64,000 nt of DNA from Schmidtea nova (taxonomy: Eukaryota). Below, piece by piece: positions 16,183 to 41,687 of this stretch (position 1 is its first letter; the number at the start of each line of letters is the position of its first letter). The notes beneath the pieces are model-generated. The model made no database searches and had not been told where the DNA came from. It saw nothing but the letters and a program-made list of their open reading frames with translations. The stretch covers positions 379,812,001 through 379,876,000 of the forward strand of contig CM097882.1 of NCBI GenBank assembly GCA_044892505.1, given 5' to 3'. A program made the translations under genes and the position numbers.

Positions 16183-16188
<6 letters not shown>

Positions 16189-16537: not shown

Positions 16538-16911
16538 TGTTGGGCCAGCCAAATCGAGCAGCATCTGAAAATAATGTACAATCAATAAAATAAATTAAAT
16601 ACAGAATAACAACAAAATAAATTACCAACACCAAAGCGTAACAAAATAAGCGGCAACATCTAAAAGAAATAAAGTATTAACCAAAACAAAATAAAACTCA
16701 AGAACTTACTCATGCGAAACAGAAAAAATCTGAATATGACAGCGCGTGGGCGGATGTCACCGAAGAGCTAAAACAAAATCAAATAAAAATTAAATCGTAC
16801 AAAAAATAAACTTACCGCATGATTAACCAAATAAATCATTGAGTTGAGTTAGGCACCAAAAAGCCGGCAACACAAAATAATGAAGCAAACATACACACAT
16901 ACTCGATGCTG

Positions 16912-17047
16912 ATTGGCTAACCAACAACACCGGTTGAGTATAAATACTGAAGTCAAATCAGTATTTGACAATGTCATTTTACCGAGTGCAAGTTGTAACT
17001 GATAACTTGTAGTAATCTTGTGAACCAATCGAAAATAAAAGGTAATT
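16912..17047 (+). promoter_or_regulatory. LTR core promoter, poly(A) signal and candidate major splice donor
   Basis: ATTGG (CCAAT box) at 16912, TATAAATA at 16939-16946, hairpin GTCAAAT-cagt-ATTTGAC at 16952-16969, AATAAA at 17034-17039, and AG|GTAATT at 17041/17042. Confidence 0.6.
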
Positions 17048-17976
17048 TCGAGTTATGTTTTGATGTATTTAAACCCTCATAATTATGTTAAAATCCATAA
17101 GGTTTTCCGGAGGCCTAACAGCCTGACGGATTCTTTGGCCTCTCAGCGCAACACACCTTATCGGTTGTGAGGTACTGATGCGGCGGGACCATAAGTTTAC
17201 TAAATACTTGATGGGGGAAAAAGGGGATGCACATAGGGTATCGAGTAAGACCTAATGATCATGAACTAAGTCAAGGTAGAGACGGTCTAGTACAAACGCT
17301 ATGCATCACGATAATAAGGTATCGAGTGACAGTTAATGGTCATAAATCGAATCAAGGTAAAGCTCATTTCGCAAGGGAAGATATATACATGAGGTATCTT
17401 GACGAGGGGGTGTACCTTCAAGGAGTGCTGGTACATCAAAAGTCGATGAGAATCGGGATAGGTAAAGCGTAACATGGTGGTCAAAGGACATTAGCGCCAA
17501 GGGGCAGTAGTGAACCGAATGAGTTGCTAATAAATACATATAATCCCACTGAGGGCATGAAAAGTCAGACCCGATAGTAGATAAAATTAGTGCGTTTCTC
17601 AACGAAGTAGTTGACTAAGGGATTACTAAATTTTCCCCGTGACGTGAATCTTGATAGTTGCTGATGATGATCCGTAAATGAACCATGTTGAATGAATGAA
17701 AATGATCGATGAGAAATTAAATGTAACGTAAAATATGATTGTAAATAACAAGTCGAAATGAGCGTAGCTAAAACCAACTGAAATTGCGGAGTGAATCAAC
17801 TCACCCAAGTAAAGTCACCACCTACATGAACACCGCGACCAATGGTCTAGTAAATTATATACGAGCTACAAGGCCTACGGCTAATAGAACGATAAACCAA
17901 GTAGGTTGATCGACATAAATATCGATGGTCGATGATAGAGTCTGTCAGTTAACCTAAAATTCCATTTCAGAGTGAC

Positions 17977-18612
17977 ATGATGAAGACCGAATATCTCATG
18001 AAGGAGCCGGTAGGACCCCTAACCGTCAAATCAGAGGAGTACATTCTACGGAGGAAACGGCGCATCCGCTCCGTCATCACACCAAAATTACCTATCGAAA
18101 TCCAAGGAGAGAAGGAGGCCCCACGCCAAATTTTCAACTCCGCACGTAGACACCTGCGTCGATGGACAAGGACCCATATGAGCACAGCGGCAAGTATTCC
18201 CGCCTGTGCATTCCAACTACAGCTGAGGTGGGAAGGCGATGTCAATTGGACGCCCTCCCCGAACCCCACCAAAGATGGATACGAAAGATGGTTCTATCAA
18301 TTTGTAGATGAAACACAACAACCCCGCTGGGTACTAAGCACCGGAATGATGACCGGGCAGGCATTCGGCCAACTCGGGTATTTGCTGCTAGACAGGCCTC
18401 GGTGTGGTGACACTGGGGAAGTCTTCGTTTACCCGAACGCCCCAGGCAGTGTTTCCGTGGATCAACACCCCGAGCCCAAAGACCTTCGCCTCTGGGAGGT
18501 GTTCATTTATCAAAACAAACTGAGTTGGAATCCGGCCCCCGAACTATACCATGAAACAGGGATTCGCCGAGACGAGAACCCGGCCGATCAAGAGTTACGA
18601 CCATACAATTGA
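17977..18612 (+). CDS. LTR-encoded 211-aa protein of unknown function
   Basis: Intact ORF, identical in both LTRs, preceded by the acceptor-like TTCCATTTCAG. Confidence 0.6.
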   Translation: MMKTEYLMKEPVGPLTVKSEEYILRRKRRIRSVITPKLPIEIQGEKEAPRQIFNSARRHLRRWTRTHMSTAASIPACAFQLQLRWEGDVNWTPSPNPTKDGYERWFYQFVDETQQPRWVLSTGMMTGQAFGQLGYLLLDRPRCGDTGEVFVYPNAPGSVSVDQHPEPKDLRLWEVFIYQNKLSWNPAPELYHETGIRRDENPADQELRPYN

Positions 18613-18789
18613 TCACGAGGACGACATCCCAATGAACGAATATCTGTTGTGAATTAAAAATATATGTATCCATTTAAAAGGGTTTTGTTTTGGTTTTGGA
18701 TGCATGGGGAATGAGTAAGGATAAGGGTGCAGTTGTTTAACGGTAAAATGGTGACTGAGAAACCAAACGATACATACATACCCTAGTTA

Positions 18790-19371
18790 ATGATACATTA
18801 CTCAGATATGGACGAAAATCCCAATCTAGATTACAAGCAAGAGGCACGCGAACATAGAGCACGATCTCGTGTCCTCGAGAGTCGCTTGAGACAGCTGAAT
18901 GAGGAGCACCAGCGGATTAAGGCAACATGGTTTAATCCTGAGAGGGTTAAAACCATCTTACAAGCCCGATACAGAGCGGAACGAACGATCGATGAACAAG
19001 CGAGAGAGGTCGCAGCCCTGAAATTAGAGTTGGCCAATTATTTAAAGGTGTCTACCCAAGACTTCATCGCTGAGCAATTGCGTCCAGTGATTAGAGCGAG
19101 CACCTTTAACAAATGGTTAAATTCGACATCAGCAACGACGAGTACGCAAACCGACGAAGAGATAATCGTAACTACGGCAACCGAGATGACCACAATCATA
19201 CCACGAGGGTCGCAGAGGACAAAACGAAGGAACCGCTTAGGGGCGAAAAAGCGGAGGGAGCGACGCGCATATGCAGATCGCGTAGGAATAGAAGTAGACT
19301 TGCTCAGTGGCCTATCTGAACAAGAACTACTAAATGTAATTAGACCCTCTGTATTGTTAAACTATAAATAA
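18790..19371 (+). CDS. LTR-encoded 193-aa coiled-coil protein with an Arg/Lys-rich motif
   Basis: Intact ORF containing KRRNRLGAKKRRERR; AATAAA follows the stop. Confidence 0.6.
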   Translation: MIHYSDMDENPNLDYKQEAREHRARSRVLESRLRQLNEEHQRIKATWFNPERVKTILQARYRAERTIDEQAREVAALKLELANYLKVSTQDFIAEQLRPVIRASTFNKWLNSTSATTSTQTDEEIIVTTATEMTTIIPRGSQRTKRRNRLGAKKRRERRAYADRVGIEVDLLSGLSEQELLNVIRPSVLLNYK

Positions 19372-19761
19372 ATGTATAAAACTAATGATTTGACTTGTCT
19401 TGTTTGTTTGTGGAATGTCTGAGAATTGAATATAACTAAAACCCGGATTCATGTAAAACTGCAGATGCGCTAAGATTAAATTACCCTAGAGCAAAAGAAA
19501 GAGCATAAGTGGGACCGAAAGAAATCCACAGACGCCTTCTATCGGTAGTGGTGGACCCGTGAATAAACAAGGGAATAGTAGCCGAAAGGTTGCTCACCTG
19601 CCTTGTCATTTCACAACGTTGACACAGTACCAACATGATGAGTAGTTAGGGATACATCATGGGTGTCAGCGGGGGAATGTTTTTATGTTGGCGAGATCAC
19701 CCTAACATATAAAATCATGAGGATCTCAGTTGTCAATCTAACCAACACACCAGCATAAATT

Positions 19762-19780
19762 TGGGGGCTCAGCCGGGATT
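19762..19780 (+). promoter_or_regulatory. Primer-binding site, tRNA-Pro-like
   Basis: TGGGGGCTCAGCCGGGATT lies 6 nt after the LTR end. The canonical Pro PBS is TGGGGGCTCGTCCGGGAT (2 mismatches). Confidence 0.85.
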
Positions 19781-20313: not shown

Positions 20314-20772
20314 ATGGAGAACAAAATAAAAGAAATGCAAACGTTTTTCGAGACAAATAACGAGACAATGGAGATAATAATGAGAAAGTTAAGACGACTC
20401 GAGGTAGGAGGATATCACAAACCGACAAACAAAACAGAAAGAGCCGAAATGATGATGAGCATAAGCGAGAATAAGATAACAGTGGATACAGCAACACGAT
20501 ATCAGTGGTATAGAGAAAGATTAAACAACCCTGAGATGAATATCGAGTGCCACAGGCTAGAACAACAAATTGCAACAAAACACGATGAGTGGATAAGAAT
20601 AACAACCGAACATACGAGACAATATCTGACGTGTTACATCTGTGAAATGAATAAGATACAGATACTGTTGTTGCCGTGTGGGCATTATCGATTCTGTAAT
20701 GAGTGTAAAATAAATGAACGATGTCCTATGTGCAACCTTCCCGTATCCGAGAAAATAACAGTGTACTTGTAA
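20314..20772 (+). CDS. 152-aa protein with a C-terminal IAP/MDM2-type C3HC4 RING (no BIR domain)
   Basis: CYICEMNKIQILLLPCGHYRFCNECKINERCPMCNLPVSEKITVYL at the extreme C-terminus. Confidence 0.85.
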   Translation: MENKIKEMQTFFETNNETMEIIMRKLRRLEVGGYHKPTNKTERAEMMMSISENKITVDTATRYQWYRERLNNPEMNIECHRLEQQIATKHDEWIRITTEHTRQYLTCYICEMNKIQILLLPCGHYRFCNECKINERCPMCNLPVSEKITVYL

Positions 20773-21475
20773 TAGAAATAAAGTTTTGAACAAGTGCAGT
20801 TGTTATTGAAATTATGAGGGTTTAAAAACGATTTGGTAAAAATGACCTAAGTAATTATGAGCTACCTACGAGTAGTCCGTTAAGCACCCATTGGGGGGAA
20901 CCAACTGATCAACTTACCCGAGATGTGTAGAAAGGGGCCAATCGCGGATATTGGAAAGCTCTTGTGATGTGACTGATCACCACATCGTGCATCAGCGGAC
21001 CAATGCGATCTTTTTATATATTTTGGTTGGGGTGAAAGGTAGGGACAACTCAATGAGGTTTAGGCGCGCGCAGAAAAACTATAAAAATAGGATGTTAAAC
21101 TGATCAGTAAAGAGAGAAAGAAAGCAATGAAATGAGTAAGATGAATAACGAAACGTGGTATATGGTGAAAGGCACGTAATCAGCTCGCATAAGGTAAAAT
21201 CAAGTAGAAAGGTTGACGAATCGAGAATAGAATAAAGGGGTATAACAGATGAACCGAGTAAATGGAAAACTCGAGGTTAAATGAATTCCTTGAAAGAAAG
21301 GAAATGATAAGAGGGGTCCTAAAGAGAAAGGATTTGCCCATAGTTCTTGAAAGATAGAACTTAACGAAACGCGACAATAGATTCTCCGAAGAAGCATAAG
21401 TGACCACTGGGAGGAACATCCCGAAGCAACACATGCAACCACTGAGAGATGATATTTCGAGTTTTCGTTCGTGAG

Positions 21476-21993
21476 CATAGGTCTCATAGTGAGCATAGGT
21501 CTCGTCATGAAACATAACATCCTAGTGAGCGTAGGTCTCGTCATAGTGAGCATAGTTCTCGTCCGTAAATATAAATCTCGTAGTGAGCAGAGTTCTCATT
21601 AATAAACACAAGACCAGCGAACATAGTCCTCATCAGTGAGCGTAGTTCTCATTAATAAACATAGTCATCGTAGTGAGCATAGTTCTCCTCAGTGAGCATA
21701 GTTCTCGTCAGTGAGCATAGTTCTCGTCAGTGAGCATAGTTCTCGTCAGTGAGCATAGTTCTCGTCAGTGAGCATAGTTCTCGTCAGTGAGCATAGTTCT
21801 CGTCAGTGAGCATAGTTCTCGTCAGTGAGCATAGTTCTCGTCAGTGAGCATAGTTCTCGTCAGTGAGCATAGTTCTCGACAGTGAGCATAGTTCTCGTCA
21901 GTGAGCATAGTTCTCGTCAGCGAGCATAGTTCTCGTCAGTGAGCATAGTTCTCGTCATTGAGCATAGTTCTCGTCATTGAGCATAGTTCTCGT
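21476..21993 (+). repeat. 19-bp minisatellite (GTGAGCATAGTTCTCGTCA), ~17 near-perfect copies plus degenerate 5' copies
   Basis: Directly visible; the homogeneous part spans ~21673-21993. Confidence 0.97.
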
Positions 21994-22317: not shown

Positions 22318-22870
22318 GGTGCTGACTGGAAAACCCAGCAGACCATGAGATTCGATGGGAATTAAAGGAAACCGGTTTGTTAAGACAGGTAAAGTGGTAA
22401 AGACGCTAGCTGGAAAACCCAGCAGGTCAATGATAACGATCAGGAAAGATCGAGAGAATAAAAGGGAGTAACAATAAAGTGGTGAAATTGAGGACGCTGA
22501 CTGGAAGACCCAGCATGTCAAAAGTGATGATCATCGGAGCAAAGAACAGGTAAAAGTCGACAGTGAAGAGATAAAGGGTGGAGAATAAGAGCGCTGACTG
22601 GAAAACCCAGCAGACTAATGAAACGACAGTCGTGGTCGAGAATAACGAGATAACAGTAAAAGGGGAGATTAAAAGCGCTGACTGGAAAACCCAGCAGGCT
22701 AATGAGATAATGAGTGATGTTGAGAGAAATAAAGTTGAGATAAAAAAGTGAGATTAAAAGCGCTGACTGGAAAACCCAACAGGCTAATGAGATAATGAGT
22801 GAAGTTGAAAGAAACAGAGTTCGAGATAAAAGGTGAGATTAAAAGCGCTGATTGGAAAGCCCAACAGGCC
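22318..22870 (+). repeat. Seven spaced copies of GCTGACTGGAAAACCCAGCAG (period ~85-95 bp)
   Basis: Copies at approximately 22320, 22405, 22495, 22592, 22677, 22762 and 22846. Confidence 0.9.
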
Positions 22871-23744: not shown

Positions 23745-26700
23745 ATGAGTGATCACAGAGAGGATCTAAGAGAAAAATTCAAGGGCGAACCATTCAACGG
23801 AGACGCCAGTAGATTGGATACGTTCCTGAAGGAATTTGGTATATTTGTGGATATATGCGGATGGAGTGCAGAAACGTTGGCAAATCGAATCCCGCTATAC
23901 TTGAAAGATAGCGCATTGGATCTGTATATTGAAAAGAGATCGGGAAGTAGTCCACCCAGAACGTGGGAAGCGATCAAGGAGTTCTTCCAACAGACGTTTG
24001 GGATAAACAAAGTGCTGAATGAAGCATTCGATGAGTTCTCAGCAAGAAAACAGAGGAGAAATGAGTCAAATGCGGTGTACGCAAGTGAATTAAGAAAGTT
24101 GGCGAAACTGGCATTCAACAGAGGAAGTCCAGTAGACGAAGAATTGATGACAGCGTTATTCGTACGAGGTCTCAGGAGACCTGACATCAGAGCACAAGTG
24201 GGATGCAAAGGATGTAAAACAGTAGATGAAGCGTTGGAAGCAGCCAACCTATTCGAATTGCATATGGCAATGAATGACATGAGAATTACGGCGGTAATGG
24301 GAAAAACGACGGAAGATGAAGAACAAGGAAAAAGAAACATGAATCAAAGTATTCCCCATTCGCAGAGATTGTTCAAAGAACCGCCAACGAGGAAGAATAA
24401 CGGATATATTACGGTGAATACGAATGGAGGAAATAGTTACAATGATAGGCAGAATAGGCAATGTCAGACGTGTGGAAAAAACGGACATTGGCAACAAGAT
24501 TGTTTTCAGAATGTAGCCTGCAAACTGTGCGGACAAAAAGGTCACTCAGAGAATCGATGTTATGGGAAAACGTGTTACACATGTGGAAAAACCGGACACA
24601 TGTCAAAAGACTGTAATCAACAGAGAAATTGGTCAAACAGTGGAAATAGACCGAATTACGGGAATCGACCAAGCTATGGGAATCAAGGTCAACAACGGAA
24701 CAACCCAAACAGCAGTGCAAACGAAGCTAGTATGAAAGAAGCTAAGTTGAGACAGGAGGTGTCTAGATTACACGAGATAATCGAAAGCATGGCAAAGGGA
24801 AGCCAACAAGCTGCTCAACCAAAGATAAACATGATCCAGTTAATAGAAGCTGAGGCTGAAAGAGAAAATAGAGAAAGCCAACAGAAACATAACCAAGAAT
24901 GGGCTAGAGTACGACGAGAAGAAGAACAAGTCAGGCAACAACGATTACAACAGTTAAAAAAGGGAAATCCAAGGATCAACATGATGCGAGCAATGATGGA
25001 AGAGAAGCAGCAGGATGAGTCAGACGAGTTAGAAGTTAAAGAGAAAAGAAACGAAGAGCAGAAACAAGAAGAAGTGAGTCAGGAAGTAGAAGCCACAGAG
25101 CAGAATCAAAAAGTTGAAGAAGTAGAAAAAGAAACAGAAATAGAAAAAGAAACAGAAAAAGAAACGAATCAAGAAGAGGAAGTGAGAATCAAACAAAGAG
25201 GAATGTTGGTGATCATGCCGAATGATCACGTGTGGCGATTCAAATACGATGTAAAAGAAGAAGTGGGAAGATTGTTCAATAAAGTAAATGAGATGATGCC
25301 GGGAGTGACGAAACTGCCCAGAGAAGCATTCCTACAAACAGAAGATCTACCAGAAGTGAAGTTAAAGATGACTGATATATGGGAAGATATGGGAGTAACG
25401 GAGACGAAAATAAACGTGATGATCATCAGAGAGGTGGAACCGGAGAAAATCCCACCACCAGTGAAACATCAAACTCGGATCAGTCGAATATTCAAAGGAA
25501 AAATAAGACGAAGACGGTTGGAAGAAATAGATGAGTTGGAGAAAAGAATGGGAAAAGCTGAAGTAACAGGAAACGAGAATGAACTAATACAAGAAGTTAG
25601 CAAAAACGAAGCGAGACCAATCGCACATATTGGGATGCTGAGACACCCAAGACAAGAGTTGTCAGATGAAGAAGACGACAGCGAAGTTAGCAGTCTGGCA
25701 GGAGACATGCTAAAGGAACCGGAAAACGAGGATAAAAAGATGGAAGTAGTCGAGACAATAGAAACAATGTCAGTAAAGGAAGACGAAATTCAGAAGCTGA
25801 TGGATAACGCGTTGGAAGTAATCCATAACGAGGAGTTTATTGACACGAAACGATACCGAAAGTTTATACGAGCAGTATGGCAAATGAAGTACAAAGAGTG
25901 GTTACAAGAAAGAGAAGTGAGGGTAATACAAGAGTTCATAGAGAAGTTATTGAAAGAACCACTCAACGAATATGTAATACAAATATGGATAAACGAGTGT
26001 TCACCGAGAATCTGGATAAGGAACCCAATGACAGACGGAATTTACCGATGGGTTGAGGACAGATTGGGAAGCTCGTACCAAGACAAATTCATATATTCGG
26101 AAAACGGATTGGTGAGAAAAGGAACGCATATGATAGACACGGGCATCTGGCCAGGAGAAATAACGACGTTATCTATATGCAACACCAAGAAGGAAGAGAA
26201 CTTACAAGGAATCGTCAAAGAAGCGAATACGTGTTATGAGATGAGAATAAAACCTCAGTTGCTAGAGGCAAAGGAAAGAATCTTGGCAGAGAATTTGAAT
26301 ACGATGATAGAACAGATCATACAACAAATCAAGAAACATCGAAAGAAATTGACGAAAAGCGAGTATGAGAATTTGAAACAGTGTATCGAGAACATACGAG
26401 ATACAAGTCAAACGAGACATTCAAATTTCAAAACAGACAAGCTAATCGCAAAGATGGGAAAAGAAATGTTTAAAAGAGGAGAAGTATCAGATCTGAAGAT
26501 TACCGTGAGATTACCGAATGAAGAGACAAGACAAATTGAGGTAATACCAGATAGTAAAGTGGGAGAAATAGTAGATGTCATCAATGAGACGATATTACAA
26601 CGAGAACGGGAAGATGAATTCGAGGATGACATTGCGATAAAATACAAAGAACACCTACTAAACGAACGTGACGAAAGACGAGCGTATAAAATCGGCATAT

Positions 26701-29700: not shown

Positions 29701-32700
29701 TCCATAGAGGACAAGCCTCATTGCAAAAAGTGTACTATGACCTGATAAACAACGATTGTATACTGAATCGAGAAATATTAAAGACAAAGTTGGCCGTAGC
29801 GATTACGAATCCAGATAGCGCGATGCCGTTATTACCACTGAGAGAAGGACATTTCGGAAGAGTGGTCGGAGAAGCAATGTATGTATACATTTGCGAAAAG
29901 ACACACGCATCGCTAGCAACAACAACGCAGTTGAAACCTGGACAATGTACAAACGAACTAGAAATCGATTACAAAGGAAAAGTACGATACGTTCAACCGG
30001 TGACGAGAATCATCAATCCACCAAGTTTTGAACCAAATCCATTCAACTGTAGTAACGCGTACGGACCGCTTTATCAGAAGCCAGATGGCAAATGGGTCAT
30101 GTTCCCAGGAAGAACTGAAGTATTAGCACCAAGAGAATTTGAGCTAATGCAGTTGTCAAAAGATAGACAGTTCAGCGACGTAGATGTCTCAAACAACGGA
30201 ATCTATAGTCCAAAAGATCTGGAAGCAGCAAGACAGAATATACTATTTCCGGCAAGAAGAGAAGCATTACTGTCAAATATCGTAACGATAACGGGAGGAA
30301 CGAATTATCGAGAAGGACCGAATTACGAACTGCTGTTGTCACCGGCACATTTCAAGAAAGCCACAGAAAATATGATGAAGGCGATGTGGGGAAGATTCCT
30401 GATATTTGGACAAATGATGGCTGGAATACTGGGAGTTATATTGATAATACAAATCGTCAGAGTGATAATAACGCAGATGTTAGCGTGTTTCGACATCTAC
30501 AAGAGAGAAAAGAAAGTGAATTGGAAAATGGTAGTAGGATTTTTACCATTCCTTGCGAAAACGATGGTGTTACATGGACACTCAAAAGACATACATCGAA
30601 TAAAGAGGTTGTTGAAGATACTTGCAAAAATGAAAGGAACTAACGAAGATGTCGGAAGAAAATTCAAAAAGATAATGCAAGATGAACAAGCAAGACGACA
30701 ACTGAAGAAGGAAAGGAAAGGATTATGGGAAAGAGTGAGAGGATATCGAACACAAGATGATTCAAGTAATGATGACGATGATGATGACGATCGAGGAGGA
30801 CAAGCGAATATAAACCAGATTCCACAGTATACCGAAAAGAGTGCAGTTGAGAATTGGAGATACAGCGCTCCACCTCAGTCGATGTATAACGAACCGATAT
30901 ACAAAGCGAAGCCGAATATGATGCAGATGATGCCGATGACAAGTATATACCCGATAATTCCAGAAGGATGCAAAGTAAAACGAGGTAGTAGCGTAAACTC
31001 GTTGGAAGACACGCACACGATAGCAGTTATGTCCACAAATATGGGACCCATCTTAACAACAACCGTAGAAATAAACGGAAGAGAAATTGAAGCTATGATC
31101 GATACAGGCGCGAATATTTCGGCGATCGACATTAATTATATACCAGAGAAAAACCAAGGAGAAATCGAGAAGACGAATGTACATGTAATCGCGTGCAGTC
31201 AAGAGACAGTAGAAGTAGCCGGAAGATGGTTTGTAAAAATTAAGCATCGAGGTGCAGAGATCAACACGTACATCGCTGTAATACCATCGCTGAGTGTACC
31301 ATGTATTATTGGAACTGACCTGATGCCAGACCTGTTCAAGGAAATCGTGATTGATCTAGGAGCAATGAAACTAAAAGATAGAACAGGAAAAATTTGCAGA
31401 ATGAAAGTTAAAGTGGCAAGTGCAGAACAAATAGTAGTGCCAGCGAGACATGAAAAGATGTGTTATGTCAAGATCGATTCAACAATAAAGGGAGATATGA
31501 TATTCGAACCAAGTAAGAAGTTCGAAGCGAAGAAGGAATTACCAATGGCAAGAGAACTGGTTACGACAAACCAAGAAGGTGAGATACCGATTAATCTGGT
31601 AAATTTCGACGAAGAGGACAAGATAATATACGAGAATGAGAGATTGGGTAAATTGACACCCATGTCCGAAATCGAAATACCAGACAAGAATGAGTGGGCA
31701 AAGGCCAAAGAAACGATCAAGCAAAGTAGACTAGGAAACATAGAACCATCCAAAGATATGGAAATACGAGAATTCGAGTCTAGCACACTCGCGGTTCAAG
31801 CGTATGAAAGATTAATTGAAGAAATTAATGTCGAGGACGACATTTTTAAAGGACCAGGGGGTGGTTCCAAAGATCACAACGATAAAGGAGACGCCGAAAA
31901 GGAGAACAACGAGGATAACAACAGCAACAGCGACAACAAAAGAACGGAAGATGAGGAAAGAGAGAGACAAGAAGAACCGAAGCCAACGAGAAACGACAAG
32001 AAAGGAGAAGCCGAAGAACGAGACAACAGTGGAACAAAAGATGAACATGCGAACTATGGAAAACGAACAGGAAGTCTACTTTTGAGACCAGAAATGTTGT
32101 GTATTGCGATATTGATAACAATCATCGGACAAGGAGAAGCCAAGAAACAACACGTCACGCTAGAGATAATCAGAGGAAACGAAGTATACGAAAGAATATG
32201 CTGGAAAGAAAACATGAGGAAAAACGATACGCTGAAGTGCATATTGTCAGATTTGAAGAAAGACGTCATCCAAATCAAAGGATTGGAGAAAGAAAAGTCA
32301 TACATAATATGCGCAATAAAGCAGAGAGGAGAACCGAAAGCACCTCAAGTAACTGCATGTCAATTATATAAAGCAACAGAAGCGCTGAAAATACAGAAAT
32401 GGATTGAGAAAAGAAGCGAAGAGACAACGAGAAGAACAGAAGTAGAATCGGAGAAAGGGAAGAATCAATCTGAAGCAGAAAAAGGAATCGGAAACCGAAC
32501 GGAGAAAGAAAGAATAACCAAAAATTCAGCGGGAAAATTAACATTCCAACCGGAATTGATATGTGTAGCATTAATACTAATCCTCATTAAGAGAATCATG
32601 GAGGACATAGATATTAGCGTAATGACGTTAGTAAATATCCAAGACCAACGAACAACGAACGGAAGATGTTGGGGACGAAACAATGAGGTAATTGGAATCA

Positions 32701-34019: not shown

Positions 34020-34141
34020 AGGGTGGAATATGAGTGTAAATAGTAGTGTAAAAACCAATGCATAACCGTATACGTATGGGTATAAATATTATAAAACATA
34101 AAAACAGAAAAAAGAGAATGATGTATATAATCTAGAAAACG

Positions 34142-34492
34142 ATGAATCAAGAAAATATCGAGATGTCGATGATGACAAGATGGAAAGTGCAATGTGACCT
34201 GCTAGCCAGAACAGTAAATGAATTACAGAGCCAGTTGACGGCCAAAACACAATTATTAACCGAGAGTTATAACTGTAATTTCGAAGCAATGAACAAAATT
34301 GAGATTCAACAACTACAGATAAACGAATTACAGAACGAGAACCGAACATTAAATGAAGTGAACAACTGGCAAGCAGAGGAAATTGACCGATTAACGAGAC
34401 ATGAAGAAGAAGAGATACCGGATAGTTGGACGAGCTGGATTGTGAATGAGATAGACGTGTATCCAGAGCCGGATTCAACTGAGGATGTATAG
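34142..34492 (+). CDS. 116-aa coiled-coil cargo protein
   Basis: Intact ORF with the same purine-rich sense strand; its C-terminus (YPEPDSTEDV) resembles that of the 386-aa ORF (FHEPEETDV). Confidence 0.65.
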   Translation: MNQENIEMSMMTRWKVQCDLLARTVNELQSQLTAKTQLLTESYNCNFEAMNKIEIQQLQINELQNENRTLNEVNNWQAEEIDRLTRHEEEEIPDSWTSWIVNEIDVYPEPDSTEDV

Positions 34493-34581: not shown

Positions 34582-35994
34582 ATGAGAGCAGAAAGTGAAG
34601 CAGATTACCAAACAATCGAGATTCTAAGAGGAGAGAATCGACAATGGGGAGTAAATGTGACGTGTGTAAAGTGTAAAAATTTACTGTTAAAACCGAGACA
34701 AACGGAATGTGGATGCAGGATGTGCACCAAGTGTATATTGCAAATAATCAGTGAAAGTGAGACAAGAAAGTGTCCAGAGTGTGACGATAAACTACTGATC
34801 AACGAGACAAAACCAGATAAAGCAATACAAAAGGAGATCTGGAAGATAAAAACAGAGTGTATAAACCAACCATGCGAATGGAAAGGACAAATAATCGAGC
34901 TAAGACAACATCTGGAGAAATGTGAAAACAAGAAAGCGATATGTGAAAAGTGCCAACAGACGATAACCATCAAGCAGTCAAAAAAGCACAAGGACGAGTG
35001 CAAAGCAGAGATAATAGAGTGTCAATACTGCGAACAAAGAGAGACGAGAGAAGTAATCGAAACAGAGCATCTCAACGTAGCAGAAGAGAAAGTGTGTAGA
35101 AAATTCAGAGGAATTTGTCCAAGTAATTGTGGAGCAGGAGAAGAAGTGATGTTGAAAGAACATTGGGAACAGTGCGAATCCAGACCAAGAAAGTGCGTAT
35201 GGAGTAAACAAGGATGTGCAGTAAAGAAAACGAGCAAAGAGATGAAAGAGCATTTGGAAACGGAAACGGTACAACACGCCGAGATGTTAACAGCGAATTT
35301 GAACGGAATGGAGCAAACCATACAGAAACTGGGAAAAGAAATCGAATCTCAGAGGATAATGACGGAGTTATTACTGGAAACGAGAGAGCAATTCGAGCTC
35401 ACCGGAGAAAAAATGATGGAGAAAATCAAAGTCATAGAGACATTGGTAAAAGAAGTAAACGTGAGACATCAAATGTGGATACGAGATACAGAGGATATCG
35501 AGAATTTACCGGTCGCACCATATGTATGGAAAATCAAGAACTTCAATGACAAATTCGCAGCAGCAAAAGCAGGAAGTCAAGTGTCGGTAACAAGTCCACC
35601 ATTCTATCTGTGGAAAAATGGATACAAAGTCCGGATGAGAATTTATGCAAATGGAGATGGATCAGGAAAGGAAACGCATGTGTCGTTATTCTTCGCGTTG
35701 TGTAAAGGTGGTTACGACGACATATTAGAATGGCCACTAGAAACAAAGGCTATAATGAGAGTGAAAAACTCGAAAGAAACAATAGCGAGAGTATTCAAAA
35801 TTGATGGTAAGCACGAAGCTTACAAAAGACCAACCACAGAATGTTCATTAGCGACTGGAGAACCAAAATTCATACCACACCAAACAACGTGGGAGATGTT
35901 GTACGATGACAACTTATATGTAGAATTGGAAATCGAAAAGAAAGCAAGTACAACAGTGATGAACACGAAGTGCACGAAAGGATGGTTAGAGTAG
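34582..35994 (+). CDS. TRAF: Intronless full-length TRAF-family protein (RING, TRAF zinc fingers, coiled coil, MATH)
   Basis: CVKC..PRQTECGCRMCTKC..CPEC; PDKAIQKEI..C.N..C.W.G; CVWSKQGC; MATH domain YVWKIKNF..SPPFY..GYKVRMRIYANGDGSGKETHVSLFF.L.KG.YDDILEWP. Confidence 0.95.
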   Translation: MRAESEADYQTIEILRGENRQWGVNVTCVKCKNLLLKPRQTECGCRMCTKCILQIISESETRKCPECDDKLLINETKPDKAIQKEIWKIKTECINQPCEWKGQIIELRQHLEKCENKKAICEKCQQTITIKQSKKHKDECKAEIIECQYCEQRETREVIETEHLNVAEEKVCRKFRGICPSNCGAGEEVMLKEHWEQCESRPRKCVWSKQGCAVKKTSKEMKEHLETETVQHAEMLTANLNGMEQTIQKLGKEIESQRIMTELLLETREQFELTGEKMMEKIKVIETLVKEVNVRHQMWIRDTEDIENLPVAPYVWKIKNFNDKFAAAKAGSQVSVTSPPFYLWKNGYKVRMRIYANGDGSGKETHVSLFFALCKGGYDDILEWPLETKAIMRVKNSKETIARVFKIDGKHEAYKRPTTECSLATGEPKFIPHQTTWEMLYDDNLYVELEIEKKASTTVMNTKCTKGWLE

Positions 35995-36083: not shown

Positions 36084-37244
36084 ATGGAAAACGCAAATGA
36101 ACATGTAAGCGAAGATGACACGAGAAACGAGATGTCAAACGAACGAGAATCAATAGAAAGAGAAATCGAAAGGAGATGTAAAATGGAAGTGGAACAAAGA
36201 ACCAGAGAATTAAACGAAGTAATGACAAATAATTTCTACGAGAAACTAAAATGTGAGAGACGAACGGAGTTATATCAACTAGAACTCGAGGAAGTAAATA
36301 AAGAGATAGTACAACTGACAACACAAATGGAGAAGCTAAAAGGAACGAATGTACGAAGTCGACAGAAGATAGAAGAGACCTATCAGTTGATGAGGAAACA
36401 AGCAGAACATTATAAAAATATGATGAAAACACGAAGAGAAGAGAGGGAGAAACAAGAGGAAAAGATGGAGGTAAAAATACTAGCAATCAAGGCTCAAGCG
36501 AGACATTGGAAGATGGAGTCGAAACGAGTGTATAAAGAAGCCAAAGAAATAATCAGAAAGACAGCATACAGCGAAGATTGGAAACTGTATCAAGAGATAG
36601 ACGAATTGAAAGAGGAATTGGAACAGAAAAAGCGACAAGAACAGACAAACAAAGAATGGAGTCGAAAACGACAGCGATTTATTCGAGAACAGGCGAAGGA
36701 ACTAAAGAAAACGCAATGGCAAATACAGATGATAAATGGAGAAATGCGAGGCATTAGACAGAAAGAGGAAGCGGAAAGACAAAAGTTGATCAGGGAAAAA
36801 GAAAGTCTGGAAAGAGATGTAAATGGCTACCAAGGAGTAGTGACTCAAAAGAAAATGGAACTGAAAGCTGTGAAGGAAAGACATGCGGAATCAAACCGAG
36901 CTTATGAGGAAAATATAACGAACTTGACGAAAGAAAACGAGGAACTGAAACAACAAATAAGAACCCTGAAAGCAGAGAAAGAAACCCCAGAAATAGAAAC
37001 CGAACCACCAGAAGCAGAAGCCCTGAAGAGAAAAGTGGAAGAAATGGAAAGACAAATCGAAACTCTGAGCGAACAATCAGACTACATGGAGTATCTGTTA
37101 GATGAAGAGATACAAATCTCTCGAACGTATCAAGATGAAATCGCAATGTGGCGAAGCAGAGTGGTGTGGTTACCGTTTATACCACCACCACCAATGGAAC
37201 TCCAAGATGAAGGGTTCCATGAACCAGAGGAGACGGATGTGTAA
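36084..37244 (+). CDS. 386-aa coiled-coil cargo protein
   Basis: Long intact E/K/R-rich heptad ORF. Confidence 0.75.
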   Translation: MENANEHVSEDDTRNEMSNERESIEREIERRCKMEVEQRTRELNEVMTNNFYEKLKCERRTELYQLELEEVNKEIVQLTTQMEKLKGTNVRSRQKIEETYQLMRKQAEHYKNMMKTRREEREKQEEKMEVKILAIKAQARHWKMESKRVYKEAKEIIRKTAYSEDWKLYQEIDELKEELEQKKRQEQTNKEWSRKRQRFIREQAKELKKTQWQIQMINGEMRGIRQKEEAERQKLIREKESLERDVNGYQGVVTQKKMELKAVKERHAESNRAYEENITNLTKENEELKQQIRTLKAEKETPEIETEPPEAEALKRKVEEMERQIETLSEQSDYMEYLLDEEIQISRTYQDEIAMWRSRVVWLPFIPPPPMELQDEGFHEPEETDV

Positions 37245-37317
37245 AAAGAGGCGAAAAATCCGTGTGTAAAAATGTACAAATCAATGTAACAGGTATTAAT
37301 CAGTAGAATAATCAGAA

Positions 37318-37842
37318 ATGAACTGGCTCAAAACCCTACCAATCCTAACGATTATGTTAACTACAACAATAATGACCTGTTCAACAACCGAAATCCAAAG
37401 AACCCTGTCAAACGAGATATCCCAAGAAATCGAAAAACAACTAAACGAAGTCAGAGAAGACTTGGAACAATTAATCCGACAAATGCGAATCAGTCATGAT
37501 CATCGCAAACCCTTACAAACCCTATTCAACCAAATCGAGAAGATCCGAGAAATCCATAAAACATTCCAAGATCACCTAAAGCCCATCAAAGGCCAAACCC
37601 AAATCGAATCCGAAATCCGAAACAGATGGATCATCGTGGGAATAGTCACAATGACAATACTGACAATCATCCTGATCATCGTGATTACGCATACCCTATA
37701 TCGAATCAGAAGCCTCAAACAACAACAAACGATAATGTGTAGATGCGCCAAACGAGAAGCAAAAACCCAACAAAGGATGAGAAGTCATCTACGACAAATC
37801 CAAGCCCGATACGAAATGCAGTCAACCAGTGAAAGGACCTGA
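37318..37842 (+). CDS. 174-aa predicted type I membrane protein (signal peptide, helical ectodomain, TM)
   Basis: N-terminal MNWLKTLPILTIMLTTTIMTC and TM WIIVGIVTMTILTIILIIVITHTLY. Confidence 0.75.
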   Translation: MNWLKTLPILTIMLTTTIMTCSTTEIQRTLSNEISQEIEKQLNEVREDLEQLIRQMRISHDHRKPLQTLFNQIEKIREIHKTFQDHLKPIKGQTQIESEIRNRWIIVGIVTMTILTIILIIVITHTLYRIRSLKQQQTIMCRCAKREAKTQQRMRSHLRQIQARYEMQSTSERT

Positions 37843-39486
37843 AAACCGACCCCTATGAGCCAGAAACATTGAACTGTGTATAAACAATAAAAACATGACA
37901 AGGACAATGTGTGACTTTGTAAAAATGGGTATAAAAGCTACCACCTTATGTGGTTTTGCATGTAAGTTCTGTCACGAACTTTTTATGTATGTTGATGTAG
38001 GTATATGCATGTAATTGCGGGACGCAATTTTAGGGGACCCCGAGTGATGTTGGGCCAGCCAAATCGAGCAGCATCTGAAAATAATGTACAATCAATAAAA
38101 TAAATTAAATACAGAATAACAACAAAATAAATTACCAACACCAAAGCGTAACAAAATAAGCGGCAACATCTAAAAGAAATAAAGTATTAACCAAAACAAA
38201 ATAAAACTCAAGAACTTACTCATGCGAAACAGAAAAAATCTGAATATGACAGCGCGTGGGCGGATGTCACCGAAGAGCTAAAACAAAATCAAATAAAAAT
38301 TAAATCGTACAAAAAATAAACTTACCGCATGATTAACCAAATCAATCATTGAGTTGAGTTAGGCACCAAAAAGCCGGCAACACAAAATAATGAAGCAAAC
38401 ATACACACATACTCGATGCTGATTGGCTAACCAACAACACCGGTTGAGTATAAATACTGAAGTCAAATCAGTATTTGACAATGTCATTTTACCGAGTGCA
38501 AGTTGTAACTGATAACTTGTAGTAATCTTGTGAACCAATCGAAAATAAAAGGTAATTTCGAGTTATGTTTTGATGTATTTAAACCCTCATAATTATGTTA
38601 AAATCCATAAGGTTTTCCGGAGGCCTAACAGCCTGACGGATTCTTTGGCCTCTCAGCGCAACACACCTTATCGGTTGTGAGGTACTGATGCGGCGGGACC
38701 ATAAGTTTACTAAATACTTGATGGGGGAAAAAGGGGATGCACATAGGGTATCGAGTAAGACCTAATGATCATGAACTAAGTCAAGGTAGAGACGGTCTAG
38801 TACAAACGCTATGCATCACGATAATAAGGTATCGAGTGACAGTTAATGGTCATAAATCGAATCAAGGTAAAGCTCATTTCGCAAGGGAAGATATATACAT
38901 GAGGTATCTTGACGAGGGGGTGTACCTTCAAGGAGTGCTGGTACATCAAAAGTCGATGAGAATCGGGATAGGTAAAGCGTAACATGGTGGTCAAAGGACA
39001 TTAGCGCCAAGGGGCAGTAGTGAACCGAATGAGTTGCTAATAAATACATATAATCCCACTGAGGGCATGAAAAGTCAGACCCGATAGTAGATAAAATTAG
39101 TGCGTTTCTCAACGAAGTAGTTGACTAAGGGATTACTAAATTTTCCCCGTGACGTGAATCTTGATAGTTGCTGATGATGATCCGTAAATGAACCATGTTG
39201 AATGAATGAAAATGATCGATGAGAAATTAAATGTAACGTAAAATATGATTGTAAATAACAAGTCGAAATGAGCGTAGCTAAAACCAACTGAAATTGCGGA
39301 GTGAATCAACTCACCCAAGTAAAGTCACCACCTACATGAACACCGCGACCAATGGTCTAGTAAATTATATACGAGCTACAAGGCCTACGGCTAATAGAAC
39401 GATAAACCAAGTAGGTTGATCGACATAAATATCGATGGTCGATGATAGAGTCTGTCAGTTAACCTAAAATTCCATTTCAGAGTGAC

Positions 39487-40122
39487 ATGATGAAGACCGA
39501 ATATCTCATGAAGGAGCCGGTAGGACCCCTAACCGTCAAATCAGAGGAGTACATTCTACGGAGGAAACGGCGCATCCGCTCCGTCATCACACCAAAATTA
39601 CCTATCGAAATCCAAGGAGAGAAGGAGGCCCCACGCCAAATTTTCAACTCCGCACGTAGACACCTGCGTCGATGGACAAGGACCCATATGAGCACAGCGG
39701 CAAGTATTCCCGCCTGTGCATTCCAACTACAGCTGAGGTGGGAAGGCGATGTCAATTGGACGCCCTCCCCGAACCCCACCAAAGATGGATACGAAAGATG
39801 GTTCTATCAATTTGTAGATGAAACACAACAACCCCGCTGGGTACTAAGCACCGGAATGATGACCGGGCAGGCATTCGGCCAACTCGGGTATTTGCTGCTA
39901 GACAGGCCTCGGTGTGGTGACACTGGGGAAGTCTTCGTTTACCCGAACGCCCCAGGCAGTGTTTCCGTGGATCAACACCCCGAGCCCAAAGACCTTCGCC
40001 TCTGGGAGGTGTTCATTTATCAAAACAAACTGAGTTGGAATCCGGCCCCCGAACTATACCATGAAACAGGGATTCGCCGAGACGAGAACCCGGCCGATCA
40101 AGAGTTACGACCATACAATTGA
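39487..40122 (+). CDS. 3'-LTR copy of the 211-aa ORF
   Basis: Identical translation to 17977-18612. Confidence 0.6.
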   Translation: MMKTEYLMKEPVGPLTVKSEEYILRRKRRIRSVITPKLPIEIQGEKEAPRQIFNSARRHLRRWTRTHMSTAASIPACAFQLQLRWEGDVNWTPSPNPTKDGYERWFYQFVDETQQPRWVLSTGMMTGQAFGQLGYLLLDRPRCGDTGEVFVYPNAPGSVSVDQHPEPKDLRLWEVFIYQNKLSWNPAPELYHETGIRRDENPADQELRPYN

Positions 40123-40299
40123 TCACGAGGACGACATCCCAATGAACGAATATCTGTTGTGAATTAAAAATATATGTATCCATTTAAAAGGGTTTTGTTT
40201 TGGTTTTGGATGCATGGGGAATGAGTAAGGATAAGGGTGCAGTTGTTTAACGGTAAAATGGTGACTGAGAAACCAAACGATACATACATACCCTAGTTA

Positions 40300-40881
40300 A
40301 TGATACATTACTCAGATATGGACGAAAATCCCAATCGAGATTACAAGCAAGAGGCACGCGAACATAGAGCACGATCTCGTGTCCTCGAGAGTCGCTTGAG
40401 ACAGCTGAATGAGGAGCACCAGCGGATTAAGGCAACATGGTTTAATCCTGAGAGGGTTAAAACCATCTTACAAGCCCGATACAGAGCGGAACGAACGATC
40501 GATGAACAAGCGAGAGAGGTCGCAGCCCTGAAATTAGAGTTGGCCAATTATTTAAAGGTGTCTACCCAAGATTTCATCGCTGAGCAATTGCGTCCAGTGA
40601 TTAGAGCGAGCACCTTTAACAAATGGTTAAATTCGACATCAGCAACGACGAGTACGCAAACCGACGAAGAGATAATCGTAACTACGGCAACCGAGATGAC
40701 CACAATCATACCACGAGGGTCGCAGAGGACAAAACGAAGGAACCGCTTAGGGGCGAAAAAGCGGAGGGAGCGACGCGCATATGCAGATCGCGTAGGAATA
40801 GAAGTAGACTTGCTCAGTGGCCTATCTGAACAAGAACTACTAAATGTAATTAGACCCTCTGTATTGTTAAACTATAAATAA
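40300..40881 (+). CDS. 3'-LTR copy of the 193-aa ORF
   Basis: Differs from the 5' copy by one L/R substitution. Confidence 0.6.
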   Translation: MIHYSDMDENPNRDYKQEAREHRARSRVLESRLRQLNEEHQRIKATWFNPERVKTILQARYRAERTIDEQAREVAALKLELANYLKVSTQDFIAEQLRPVIRASTFNKWLNSTSATTSTQTDEEIIVTTATEMTTIIPRGSQRTKRRNRLGAKKRRERRAYADRVGIEVDLLSGLSEQELLNVIRPSVLLNYK

Positions 40882-41640
40882 ATGTATAAAACTAATGATT
40901 TGACTTGTCTTGTTTGTTTGTGGAATGTCTGAGAATTGAATATAACTAAAACCCGGATTCATGTAAAACTGCAGATGCGCTAAGATTAAATTACCCTAGA
41001 GCAAAAGAAAGAGCATAAGTGGGACCGAAAGAAATCCACAGACGCCTTCTATCGGTAGTGGTGGACCCGTGAATAAACAAGGGAATAGTAGCCGAAAGGT
41101 TGCTCACCTGCCTTGTCATTTCACAACGTTGACACAGTACCAACATGATGAGTAGTTAGGGATACATCATGGGTGTCAGCGGGGGAATGTTTTTATGTTG
41201 GCGAGATCACCCTAACATATAAAATCATGAGGATCTCAGTTGTCAATCTAACCAACACACCAGCACATCGTAATGGATACAATAATATTCGATTGTGATA
41301 TCACGTTATGATGATCTGAAAGTAGGCAGTTATGTGGAGCATGAGTCATCGCCGAACAAAGGAAATGACGTCACCCCCCATGGGTTAGGAAAATTTTTAT
41401 GACATATCGCGATGACTCATCGATGACTCATTTCAAATTTGAATTTTATGACGTCATCAACGACTCATTTCAATTTCAAATTTTAAATTTGAATTTCCAA
41501 AGGTCAAATAAGGTCAAACCTTCAAACAAGGGTATCATTCGAATGGTCTTTGAGAGGTGCACACAATGGTCATACCCTCGAATGTTTATGGAGGGTTCTT
41601 AACCTTCAAAGGGTGCAAAACCTTCAACCTTTTTCAAACC

Positions 41641-41687
<47 letters not shown>

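What the first reader, a model, noticed from the sequence alone, without database searches (positions are those of the whole stretch)
16538..41265. Recently inserted 24.7-kb endogenous-retrovirus-like element with no RT or integrase but a cell-death/ubiquitin-signalling cargo kit
Seen in sequence: near-identical 3.2-kb LTRs, a perfect 4-bp TSD, a PBS and uninterrupted ORFs, so the insertion is recent. No ORF carries RT YxDD, RNase H or integrase DDE motifs. It keeps gag, protease and env, and carries Bcl-2-like, IAP-type RING, TRAF, UBL and FN3-like membrane modules. Inference: it is a non-autonomous element that supplies its own particle, borrows RT/IN in trans from a helper, and manipulates host apoptosis or TNF-receptor signalling. 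Established knowledge: giant Gypsy-type Burro elements are known from Schmidtea mediterranea, so overlap with them must be checked. An RT-less, env-bearing, cargo-rich form may be undescribed.
Basis: partly seen in the sequence, partly recalled or inferred. Interest (0 to 1): 0.96.

Follow-up and report, generated by a model that had tools for sequence, protein, structure and literature searches.

The report
Pol-less copy of giant Burro-type retroelement
This is a very young 24.7-kb insertion of a Burro-type giant flatworm retrovirus-like element that has lost its reverse transcriptase and integrase but keeps everything else, so it is a defective variant of a known kind, not a new kind of element.

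Summary
There are two 3,218-bp LTRs with 3 mismatches, TG..CA ends, a 4-bp target duplication (CATC) and a tRNA-type primer site. One open frame of 3,424 codons has no stops. No RT, RNase H or integrase appears in any of six frames by three independent tests.

The rest is largely already described. Burro/GYPSM1 elements of Schmidtea are published as giant Gypsy-like elements. Their single polyprotein carries gag, TRAF/MATH, ubiquitin-like and BCL2-like motifs, an in-frame mononegavirus-type env, protease, a dUTPase-like domain and RT-RH-IN. This copy has that layout, plus separate TRAF and IAP-type RING ORFs. It lacks nearly all of pol beyond the dUTPase-like domain, through one in-frame internal deletion.

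After the pol remnant comes a membrane tail of four tandem, tentatively FN3-like modules. Four pol-bearing relatives carry a comparable membrane tail after integrase.

The copy must have been made with RT/IN from a pol-bearing relative. The tools could not show whether it belongs to a propagating non-autonomous lineage or is a one-off deletion, because no planarian genome was searchable. Interest is moderate.

The parts
16534..16537 (.). Target-site duplication, left copy (CATC)
   Evidence: the same 4 bases lie directly outside both LTRs.
16538..19755 (+). 5' LTR, 3,218 bp, TG..CA ends. Holds two open frames of 219 and 194 codons (17953-18609, 18787-19368).
   Evidence: 99.9% identical to the 3' LTR; both open frames are longer than in any of 500 block shuffles; no Pfam hit.
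19762..19779 (+). Primer-binding site, 18 nt, 6 nt after the LTR. Its complement ends in CCA.
   Evidence: read from the sequence. The cognate tRNA was not identified, and the window holds no tRNA gene.
20314..20772 (+). Upstream accessory ORF of 152 aa with a C-terminal IAP-type RING. No BIR domain.
   Evidence: zf-C3HC4_3, E 3e-9; cIAP/XIAP RING chains, E 5e-6 to 2e-5; no BIR.
21460..21993 (+). Tandem array of a 19-bp unit in the leader (about 20 copies in its 93%-matching core, 21622-21993). A second array of an 85-bp unit lies at 22572-22869.
   Evidence: Tandem repeats are drawn in the published Burro maps.
23745..34019 (+). Giant polyprotein ORF of 3,424 aa with no stop or frameshift. 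Order: gag, cargo, Bcl-2-like, env, pol remnant, membrane tail.
23745..24644 (+). gag: capsid-like N-terminus and three CCHC zinc knuckles (aa 240-290)
   Evidence: zf-CCHC and retroviral NC chains; 40% identity over 309 aa to the gag of P0002; match to P0001 gag.
25977..26180 (+). Candidate ubiquitin-like module (aa ~745-812), tentative
   Evidence: a 3-row profile with P0001 and a window remnant hits ubiquilin, ubiquitin, SUMO and ISG15, E 0.014-0.8. No single-sequence hit.
28062..28649 (+). Bcl-2-like module (aa ~1440-1635) with a GGWE motif shared with P0001; weak support
   Evidence: a 2-row profile hits Bcl-xL chains first (E 0.005-0.07) over the BH1-BH2 part. No single-sequence hit. The position matches the BCL2-like motif published for Burro.
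28650..30614 (+). env: class III fusion glycoprotein of Monjiviricetes type, with a signal-like segment (aa 1636-1660) and a TM anchor (aa 2224-2242), in frame
   Evidence: PF24664, E 1e-67; 34-36% identity to the env of P0001, P0004 and P0038; hydrophobic segments.
31005..32069 (+). pol remnant, given as one part. It holds the protease (DTG; aa 2439-2529), a dUTPase-like domain, a short lead-in of RT and an acidic low-complexity stretch. pol is broken by one internal in-frame deletion that removes nearly all of RT and all of RNase H and integrase. No stops, no frameshifts.
   Evidence: RVP, E 7e-9; retropepsin chains E 3e-17 and a dUTPase chain E 0.008; all 85 relatives match only this part; no RT, RH or IN.
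32070..34019 (+). Membrane tail: two signal-like hydrophobic segments, four tandem ~95-aa modules (tentatively FN3-like), a TM anchor (aa 3344-3362) and a 62-aa cytoplasmic end
   Evidence: the modules are related (z 4-12) with invariant T, C-W, C and C; model pLDDT 55, all-beta; the PDB list is dominated by FN3 domains but no hit has E<0.1; no relative among 1.84 billion representatives.
34142..34492 (+). Accessory ORF, 116 aa, unknown
   Evidence: no family.
34582..35994 (+). Accessory ORF, 470 aa: full-length TRAF homologue (RING, TRAF zinc finger, coiled coil, MATH)
   Evidence: MATH E 4e-25, zf-TRAF, TRAF3_RING. TRAF5/3/2/1 chains E 5e-27 to 1e-24; TRAF6 RING-zinc-finger E 5e-13.
36084..37244 (+). 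Accessory ORF, 386 aa, probably coiled coil, unknown
   Evidence: only a weak MAD hit (E 0.003); no PDB hit.
37318..37842 (+). Accessory ORF, 174 aa, unknown
   Evidence: no family.
38048..41265 (+). 3' LTR, 3,218 bp, with twins of the two LTR open frames
41266..41269 (.). Target-site duplication, right copy (CATC)

Best explanation
The feature is a recently integrated copy of a Burro-type giant Ty3/gypsy, retrovirus-like element of a flatworm. It has lost nearly all of RT and all of RNase H and integrase through one in-frame internal deletion. It keeps the cis signals (LTRs, primer site). It also keeps one polyprotein: gag, a ubiquitin-like and Bcl-2-like cargo, a class III env, protease, a dUTPase-like domain and a membrane tail. 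Separate RING and TRAF ORFs and three unknown ORFs remain too.

Shown: the anatomy, the youth of the insertion and the absence of pol.

Inferred: the copy cannot reverse-transcribe or integrate by itself, so the RT/IN that made it came from a pol-bearing relative. In Ty3/gypsy elements and retroviruses these enzymes enter the particle as a gag-pol fusion that co-assembles with gag. A helper would therefore need a compatible gag and would have to recognise the same LTR ends and primer site.

My leaning, not shown: it belongs to a lineage copied in trans (about 0.5). The alternative is a deletion made in the single replication cycle that produced it, or after integration (about 0.35).
For: - LTR pair, target duplication and primer site.
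- Open 3,424-codon frame with coding periodicity throughout, including the tail.
- Domains.
- Absence of RT/RH/IN by four searches, with a positive control.
- Collinearity with the pol-bearing relative P0001 (gag, ubiquitin, env, ankyrin, PR, RT, RH, IN, membrane tail).
- All 85 database relatives match only the protease-proximal part.
- Four pol-bearing relatives carry a signal-like segment and a TM anchor after integrase, so a tail that directly follows the pol remnant is what a deletion of RT-RH-IN would leave.
- P0002, a relative, is itself an internally deleted gag..PR..IN product, so such derivatives occur in this group.
- The published Burro description matches the layout and the cargo.
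Against: - No other copy of this element and no pol-bearing partner with matching LTRs could be searched for. No planarian genome, Repbase or Dfam was available, and the element's own proteins are not in the protein collection.
- The tail shows no detectable sequence similarity to the tails of relatives, so its homology to them rests on architecture alone.
- The in-frame state of the deletion has a one-in-three chance and does not show selection.
- The host species was not verified.
- The polypurine tract is weak.
Confidence: 0.78

Rival explanations
1. One reading: an established RT-less lineage, kept by selection, that makes its own particle and fusogen, takes RT/IN from a helper and uses its TRAF, RING, Bcl-2-like and UBL cargo to alter host cell-death signalling.
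For: - Everything except pol is intact in a 10.3-kb frame, and five further ORFs are open.
- The copy integrated with a clean target duplication.
- Multi-copy non-autonomous lineages are sampled more often than singletons (established knowledge: ETn/MusD and IAP I-delta-1 in mouse; LARDs in cereals).
- The tail has four modules, where the relatives' tails are shorter.
Against: - The copy is so young (3 LTR mismatches) that intact frames need no selection.
- No second copy was seen, and no helper was identified. The RT fragment in the window is a generic, broken Ty3/gypsy RT.
- The cargo is inherited from pol-bearing Burro-type elements, not special to an RT-less form.
- No functional data exist.
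Confidence: 0.5
2. A one-off defective copy. The deletion arose by template switching during the reverse transcription that produced this insertion, or by a genomic deletion soon after integration. No lineage and no trans-mobilisation are involved.
For: - Large deletions are common products of retroviral reverse transcription (established knowledge).
- A short lead-in of RT is retained, as expected from a deletion and not from a design.
- An in-frame outcome has a one-in-three chance.
- Only one copy is in the window.
Against: No parent sequence is available, so no junction signature could be examined. Size-biased sampling favours multi-copy lineages.
Confidence: 0.35
3. A copy made from a spliced subgenomic RNA. 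Pol-bearing siblings would splice out RT-RH-IN to express the membrane tail, and one such spliced RNA was packaged and reverse-transcribed.
For: - Relatives place a signal-peptide-bearing membrane protein after integrase, and that protein needs some route to expression.
- Spliced-RNA-derived copies are known for some retroelements (established knowledge).
Against: No sibling sequence or transcript data were at hand, so no splice sites could be compared. The retained frame would have to be a property of the intron.
Confidence: 0.08
4. An assembly artefact: a pol region collapsed or dropped in the assembly.
For: Planarian genomes are hard to assemble because of Burro repeats. N runs exist elsewhere in the window.
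Against: There is no gap inside the element. The frame stays open across the whole ORF. A collapse would not be expected to leave a clean in-frame join, although one frame in three would do so by chance.
Confidence: 0.04

Closest known systems
Burro1-4 / GYPSM1 giant Gypsy-like LTR elements of Schmidtea mediterranea, and the Burro-like element of Dugesia (Girardia) tigrina (Jurka 2007; Grohme et al. 2018; Arkhipova and Yushenova 2019, PMC6431247)
   Same: - Long LTRs, leader tandem repeats and one huge polyprotein.
- gag with three CCHC knuckles at the N-terminus.
- In-frame mononegavirus-type env between gag and protease.
- A dUTPase-like domain after the protease.
- TRAF/MATH, RING-type, ubiquitin-like and BCL2-like cargo.
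- Accessory ORFs that in other members are subdomains of the polyprotein.
   Different: - RT, RNase H and integrase are missing.
- The polyprotein has 3,424 aa, against 4,873 and 5,140 aa.
- TRAF is a separate downstream ORF.
- No BIR domain or ankyrin repeats were found.
- It ends in a four-module membrane tail that the review does not mention.
- Nucleotide identity to Burro1-4 could not be measured.
P0001 (4,057 aa, ENA metagenome contig ERZ2227838 NODE_75) and P0004, P0014, P0038: pol-bearing GAG-ENV-POL polyproteins
   Same: Collinear gag, Bcl-2-like region, env, protease and dUTPase-like domain (24-36% identity). They carry a membrane tail at the C-terminus.
   Different: They carry RT, RNase H and integrase between the dUTPase-like domain and the tail. 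Their tails are not detectably similar in sequence to this one.
Non-autonomous, internally deleted LTR elements copied in trans: mouse IAP I-delta-1 and ETn/MusD; plant LARDs and BARE2 (from established knowledge; LARDs also cited in PMC6431247)
   Same: Intact LTRs and primer site, with loss of the replication enzymes. These families depend on a related autonomous element for RT/IN.
   Different: Those families are shown to be multi-copy and to have named helpers; here neither is shown. This copy keeps an unusually large intact coding load (gag, env, protease, cargo).
Env-carrying Ty3/gypsy elements with GAG-ENV-POL order in Platyhelminthes, Nematoda and Bryozoa (PMC13524379)
   Same: A class III fusogen placed between gag and pol.
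   Different: That paper classes the flatworm env as HSV/gB-type and treats it as a separate ORF. Here the best Pfam match is the Monjiviricetes fusion glycoprotein family, the env is in frame with gag, and pol is absent.

Membership tests
Burro-type giant Ty3/gypsy elements of dugesiid planarians | Very long element with long LTRs and leader tandem repeats | tested here: met
   24.7 kb overall, LTRs of 3.2 kb, and 19-bp and 85-bp arrays. It is shorter than the >30 kb of full Burro copies, as expected without pol.
Burro-type giant Ty3/gypsy elements of dugesiid planarians | Single huge polyprotein that starts with gag and two or three CCHC knuckles | tested here: met
   3,424-aa ORF with three knuckles at aa 240-290.
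Burro-type giant Ty3/gypsy elements of dugesiid planarians | env of mononegavirus type in frame between gag and protease | tested here: met
   PF24664, E 1e-67, upstream of RVP in the same frame.
Burro-type giant Ty3/gypsy elements of dugesiid planarians | Apoptosis and ubiquitin cargo (MATH/TRAF, BIR/RING, Ubi/SUMO-like, BCL2-like, ankyrin) | tested here: inconclusive
   TRAF and the IAP-type RING are clear. The Bcl-2-like and UBL modules are supported only by small profiles, E 0.005-0.07 and 0.014-0.8. BIR and ankyrin were not found.
Burro-type giant Ty3/gypsy elements of dugesiid planarians | PR, dUTPase-like, RT, RNase H and integrase in the polyprotein | tested here: not met
   PR and the dUTPase-like domain are present. 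RT, RH and IN are absent. The element therefore fits only as a deleted derivative.
Burro-type giant Ty3/gypsy elements of dugesiid planarians | Sequence identity to Burro1-4/GYPSM1 references; Ty3/gypsy placement of the RT | not testable with these tools
   No Repbase, Dfam or planarian genome was available, and the element has no RT to place in a tree.
Non-autonomous LTR retroelement copied in trans | Intact LTRs, primer site and polypurine tract, with target-site duplication | tested here: met
   The polypurine tract is weak.
Non-autonomous LTR retroelement copied in trans | No RT or integrase of its own | tested here: met
Non-autonomous LTR retroelement copied in trans | Several copies at different loci with the same internal structure | not testable with these tools
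   Only one copy is in the window. Its proteins are absent from the public collections searched.
Non-autonomous LTR retroelement copied in trans | An autonomous partner with matching LTR ends, primer site and gag | not testable with these tools
   The window's other retroelement pieces (53376-59384 on the - strand; 62476-63998 on the + strand) are divergent and broken.

The most novel reading that the evidence does not exclude
A self-packaging 'satellite' lineage of the giant planarian retrovirus-like elements. It would have shed RT/IN yet keep, under selection, its own capsid, fusogen, protease and host-signalling genes, and would live off the enzymes of pol-bearing Burro relatives. In addition, the membrane tail after integrase (here four FN3-like modules) would be a second surface protein of this clade that has not been described.
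Probability: 0.3. Interest if true: 0.6.

Novelty: new variant of a known kind. Interest (0 to 1): 0.4.

Why it matters
Burro elements make up a large share of planarian genomes, and BURRO1 transcripts rise when the PIWI protein SMEDWI-2 is knocked down (PMC8532177). A young, pol-less copy that is otherwise intact shows that members of this group were being copied very recently. If siblings exist, it would also show that giant retrovirus-like elements have defective riders, as mouse IAP and MusD do.

It is also a clean natural example of which parts a defective copy retains: gag, env, protease and the cell-death and ubiquitin genes. The membrane tail after integrase, seen in four relatives and expanded here, deserves a description of its own. 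None of this changes the known picture of Burro biology unless a lineage under selection is shown.

Tried and rejected
- **Exact look-ups.** Look-ups of the giant ORF and the TRAF ORF in public assemblies found nothing. P0002 could not be placed on a contig, and the cluster look-up gave only UniParc ids without an organism.
- **Whole-ORF homologue search.** It gave one hit, P0001.
- **Representative search with protease plus tail.** No hit at all to the tail.
- **Structure of aa 480-1679 from a single sequence.** It failed (pLDDT 35) and was not used for fold search.
- **Single-sequence searches for cargo domains.** Pfam and PDB searches for Bcl-2, ubiquitin, fn3 and dUTPase found nothing. Only small profiles gave named but marginal hits.
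- **Tail homology.** BLAST, phmmer and hhalign between this tail and the relatives' tails were not significant.
- **Other scans.** There is no Rfam family in the window and no tRNA gene to name the primer.
- **Literature.** The Grohme et al. 2018 paper was not held.
- **Rejected: RT/IN on the minus strand or in the 4-kb leader.** The six-frame tests were negative.
- **Rejected: the neighbouring RT at 62476-63998 as a specific helper.** It is a generic Ty3/gypsy RT, broken, with no similarity to this element's protease region.
- **Rejected: the 7-bit match of the pol profile at 34136-34489 as a pol remnant.** It is not collinear, it is at noise level and it has no Pfam support.


Full report
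**1. Observation**

The window holds two direct repeats of 3,218 bp at 16538-19755 and 38048-41265. They differ at 3 positions and have no gaps. They begin TG and end CA, and the four bases CATC lie directly outside both, as a target-site duplication. Six bases after the 5' LTR is an 18-nt site (19762-19779) that starts TGG and whose complement ends CCA, like the 3' end of a tRNA. The window holds no tRNA gene, so the primer could not be named. The tract before the 3' LTR is only weakly purine-rich. N runs lie only outside the element. The element has about 40% G+C with a strongly purine-rich + strand, and it sits in flanks of 23-33% G+C. The insertion is therefore real and very young.

**2. 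Anatomy**

A 4-kb leader carries a 152-aa ORF with a C-terminal IAP-type RING and two tandem arrays. One frame of 3,424 codons follows (23745-34019). It has no stop, against 330 and 170 stops in the other two + frames, and it shows the same codon-position bias from end to end. In order, it holds:
- gag with three CCHC knuckles;
- about 1,100 residues of cargo;
- a Bcl-2-like region;
- a class III fusion glycoprotein of the Monjiviricetes family (PF24664, E 1e-67) with a signal-like segment and a TM anchor;
- a retropepsin with DTG (profile E 3e-17 to ASPRV1/DDI1);
- a dUTPase-like domain (one dUTPase chain, E 0.008);
- an acidic low-complexity stretch;
- a membrane tail.

Downstream lie ORFs of 116 aa, 470 aa, 386 aa and 174 aa. 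The 470-aa ORF is a full TRAF with RING, TRAF zinc finger and MATH; it matches TRAF5/3/2/1 chains at E 5e-27 to 1e-24.

**3. No RT, RNase H or integrase**

- Pfam on the giant ORF, even at E 10, gives none.
- Pfam on 50 other + strand open segments gives none.
- tblastn with the pol of the relative P0001 gives no hit in six frames at E 10.
- A profile built from RT-RH-IN of nine relatives hits only the neighbouring element at 62476-63998 (E 2e-67 and 3e-20). Inside this element it finds nothing above 7 bits.

pol is broken once, by an internal in-frame deletion. There are no stops and no frameshifts in the giant ORF.

**4. What is already known**

Arkhipova and Yushenova (PMC6431247) summarise Burro/GYPSM1 of Schmidtea mediterranea. 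These elements exceed 30 kb and have a 4,873-aa ORF1. That ORF1 holds gag with three knuckles, MATH_TRAF_C, Ubi2/SUMO-like, BCL2-like, an env in frame between gag and pol with hits to mononegavirus glycoproteins, PR, a dUTPase-like domain, RT, RH and IN. BIR, ankyrin and Smc motifs, tandem repeats and accessory ORFs are also described, and an accessory ORF in one member can be a subdomain of the polyprotein in another. A GAG-ENV-POL order with a class III env is also reported for flatworm Ty3/gypsy elements (PMC13524379).

**5. Relatives found here**

The whole-ORF search returned one protein, P0001 (4,057 aa). It carries gag, ubiquitin, env, ankyrin, PR, RT, RH and IN, and it is collinear with the window's ORF in gag, the Bcl-2-like region plus env, and PR plus the next domain.

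The exhaustive representative search used protease plus tail as the query. It returned 85 proteins, and all of them match only the protease-proximal part. Homology with pol-bearing relatives continues through the dUTPase-like domain and a short lead-in of RT, and then ends. This points to descent from a pol-bearing ancestor by deletion, and not to an element that never had pol.

The closest relative, P0002, shares 40% identity in gag and 57% after the protease. It is itself an internally deleted product that joins gag, part of PR and the integrase zinc-binding domain.

**6. The tail**

After the pol remnant come two signal-like hydrophobic segments, four tandem modules of about 95 residues, a TM anchor and a 62-residue end. 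The modules have invariant T, C-W, C and C, and pairwise z-scores of 4 to 12.

A model of one module, built with the other three as its alignment, is all-beta but of low confidence (pLDDT 55). Its PDB matches are dominated by FN3 domains (tenascin and Tencon, erythropoietin receptor, gp130, fibronectin) at TM about 0.5, but no match has E below 0.1. FN3-like is therefore tentative.

Four pol-bearing relatives (P0001, P0004, P0014, P0038) each have a signal-like segment and a TM anchor after integrase. Their ectodomains are weakly similar to one another (E 3e-4 to 0.02). The window's tail shows no detectable sequence similarity to them or to anything in 1.84 billion representatives. The likeness is one of architecture only. 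The review I could read does not mention such a tail.

**7. Cargo claims**

- TRAF and the IAP-type RING are solid.
- The Bcl-2-like region is supported only by a two-row profile with P0001, which hits Bcl-xL chains first (E 0.005-0.07) over BH1-BH2. A GGWE motif is shared by both rows.
- One ubiquitin-like module (aa ~745-812) is supported by a three-row profile that hits ubiquilin, ubiquitin, SUMO and ISG15 (E 0.014-0.8).
- Single-sequence searches find neither.
- BIR and ankyrin are absent.

**8. How it most likely works**

*Shown:* the copy has the cis signals and cannot make RT or integrase.

*Inferred:* the enzymes came from a pol-bearing relative. In this class of element they enter the particle as a gag-pol fusion. 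A helper would therefore need a compatible gag and would have to recognise the same LTR ends and primer site.

Three routes remain open:
- A lineage copied in trans, as with mouse IAP I-delta-1 or ETn/MusD (my leaning, about 0.5, because multi-copy lineages are sampled more often).
- A deletion made in the one replication cycle that produced this copy, or after integration (about 0.35).
- A copy of a spliced RNA that removes RT-RH-IN to express the tail (about 0.08).

An assembly artefact is unlikely (about 0.04), since there is no gap and the frame is open. The intact frames do not show selection, because the copy is too young to have decayed and an in-frame deletion has a one-in-three chance. 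Effects on host cell death or TNF-type signalling are plausible from the domains but untested, here and in the literature.

**9. Limits**

- No planarian genome, Repbase or Dfam could be searched.
- The element's own proteins are not in the public collections.
- The host was not verified. A dugesiid planarian is inferred from the AT-rich flanks and the Burro-like content.
- The Grohme et al. 2018 paper was not held.

**10. Rule compliance**

The pol profile was used only as a search model.

One possible slip has to be stated. My reasoning, one notebook entry and some script tables record the outer bounds of stretches that align with relatives, or of open segments. These loosely bracket the pol deletion and the frame change of the neighbouring RT fragment.

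**11. Verdict**

This is a pol-deleted variant of a known kind, of moderate interest. The open question is whether it is one of a lineage.

Noticed in passing
window 53376-59384, - strand: Degraded remnant of another Burro-like element. Pieces match gag, the ubiquitin-like region and env of P0001 (25-48% identity). It is broken many times (breaks not counted), has no nucleotide similarity to the young element, and borders N runs at 50474-51579.
   Followed up: partly
window 62476-63998, + strand: RT and RNase H of a Ty3/gypsy element that runs off the window's end (42% identity to P0001 RT; Pfam RVT_1 E 1e-35). It has one change of frame. It shows no similarity to the young element's protease region, so it is not a specific helper candidate.
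   Followed up: partly
window 17953-18609 and 18787-19368 (twins at 39463-40119 and 40297-40878): Each LTR holds two + strand open frames of 219 and 194 codons, longer than in any of 500 block shuffles. There is no Pfam hit. They could be further accessory genes at the 3' end of the transcript.
   Followed up: partly
proteins P0001, P0004, P0014, P0038 (L001:11000-12454 for P0001): Pol-bearing relatives all carry, after integrase, a signal-like segment, a Cys/Trp-containing ectodomain, a Ser/Thr-rich stalk, a TM anchor and a basic end. This is a membrane protein at the end of the polyprotein that the review I read does not describe.
   Followed up: partly
protein P0010 (UniParc UPI0006023D27): A 217-aa database protein joins a protease/dUTPase-like piece of a Burro-like element to a ThiF (E1-like) domain. 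It is either a chimeric transcript or further ubiquitin-pathway cargo.
   Followed up: no
protein P0002 (UniParc UPI00060AF4C5): The closest database relative is itself an internally deleted product: gag with three knuckles, part of the protease, the next domain, then the integrase zinc-binding domain.
   Followed up: partly
window 4669-7581, + strand: 970-codon ORF with an SNF2-related domain and a helicase C-terminal domain (E 8e-52, 2e-21). It is probably a host gene exon or an intronless gene.
   Followed up: no
window 46424-47824, - strand: 466-codon ORF with a hAT dimerisation domain (E 6e-9): a hAT transposase remnant. Next to it is a 723-codon ORF (48061-50232, + strand) with no family.
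   Followed up: no
window 41535-43023: Tandem and dispersed repeats of about 120 and 156 bp lie just downstream of the insertion, and an (AT)n run lies at 16128-16185 just upstream. The element landed in repeat-rich, AT-rich DNA.
   Followed up: no
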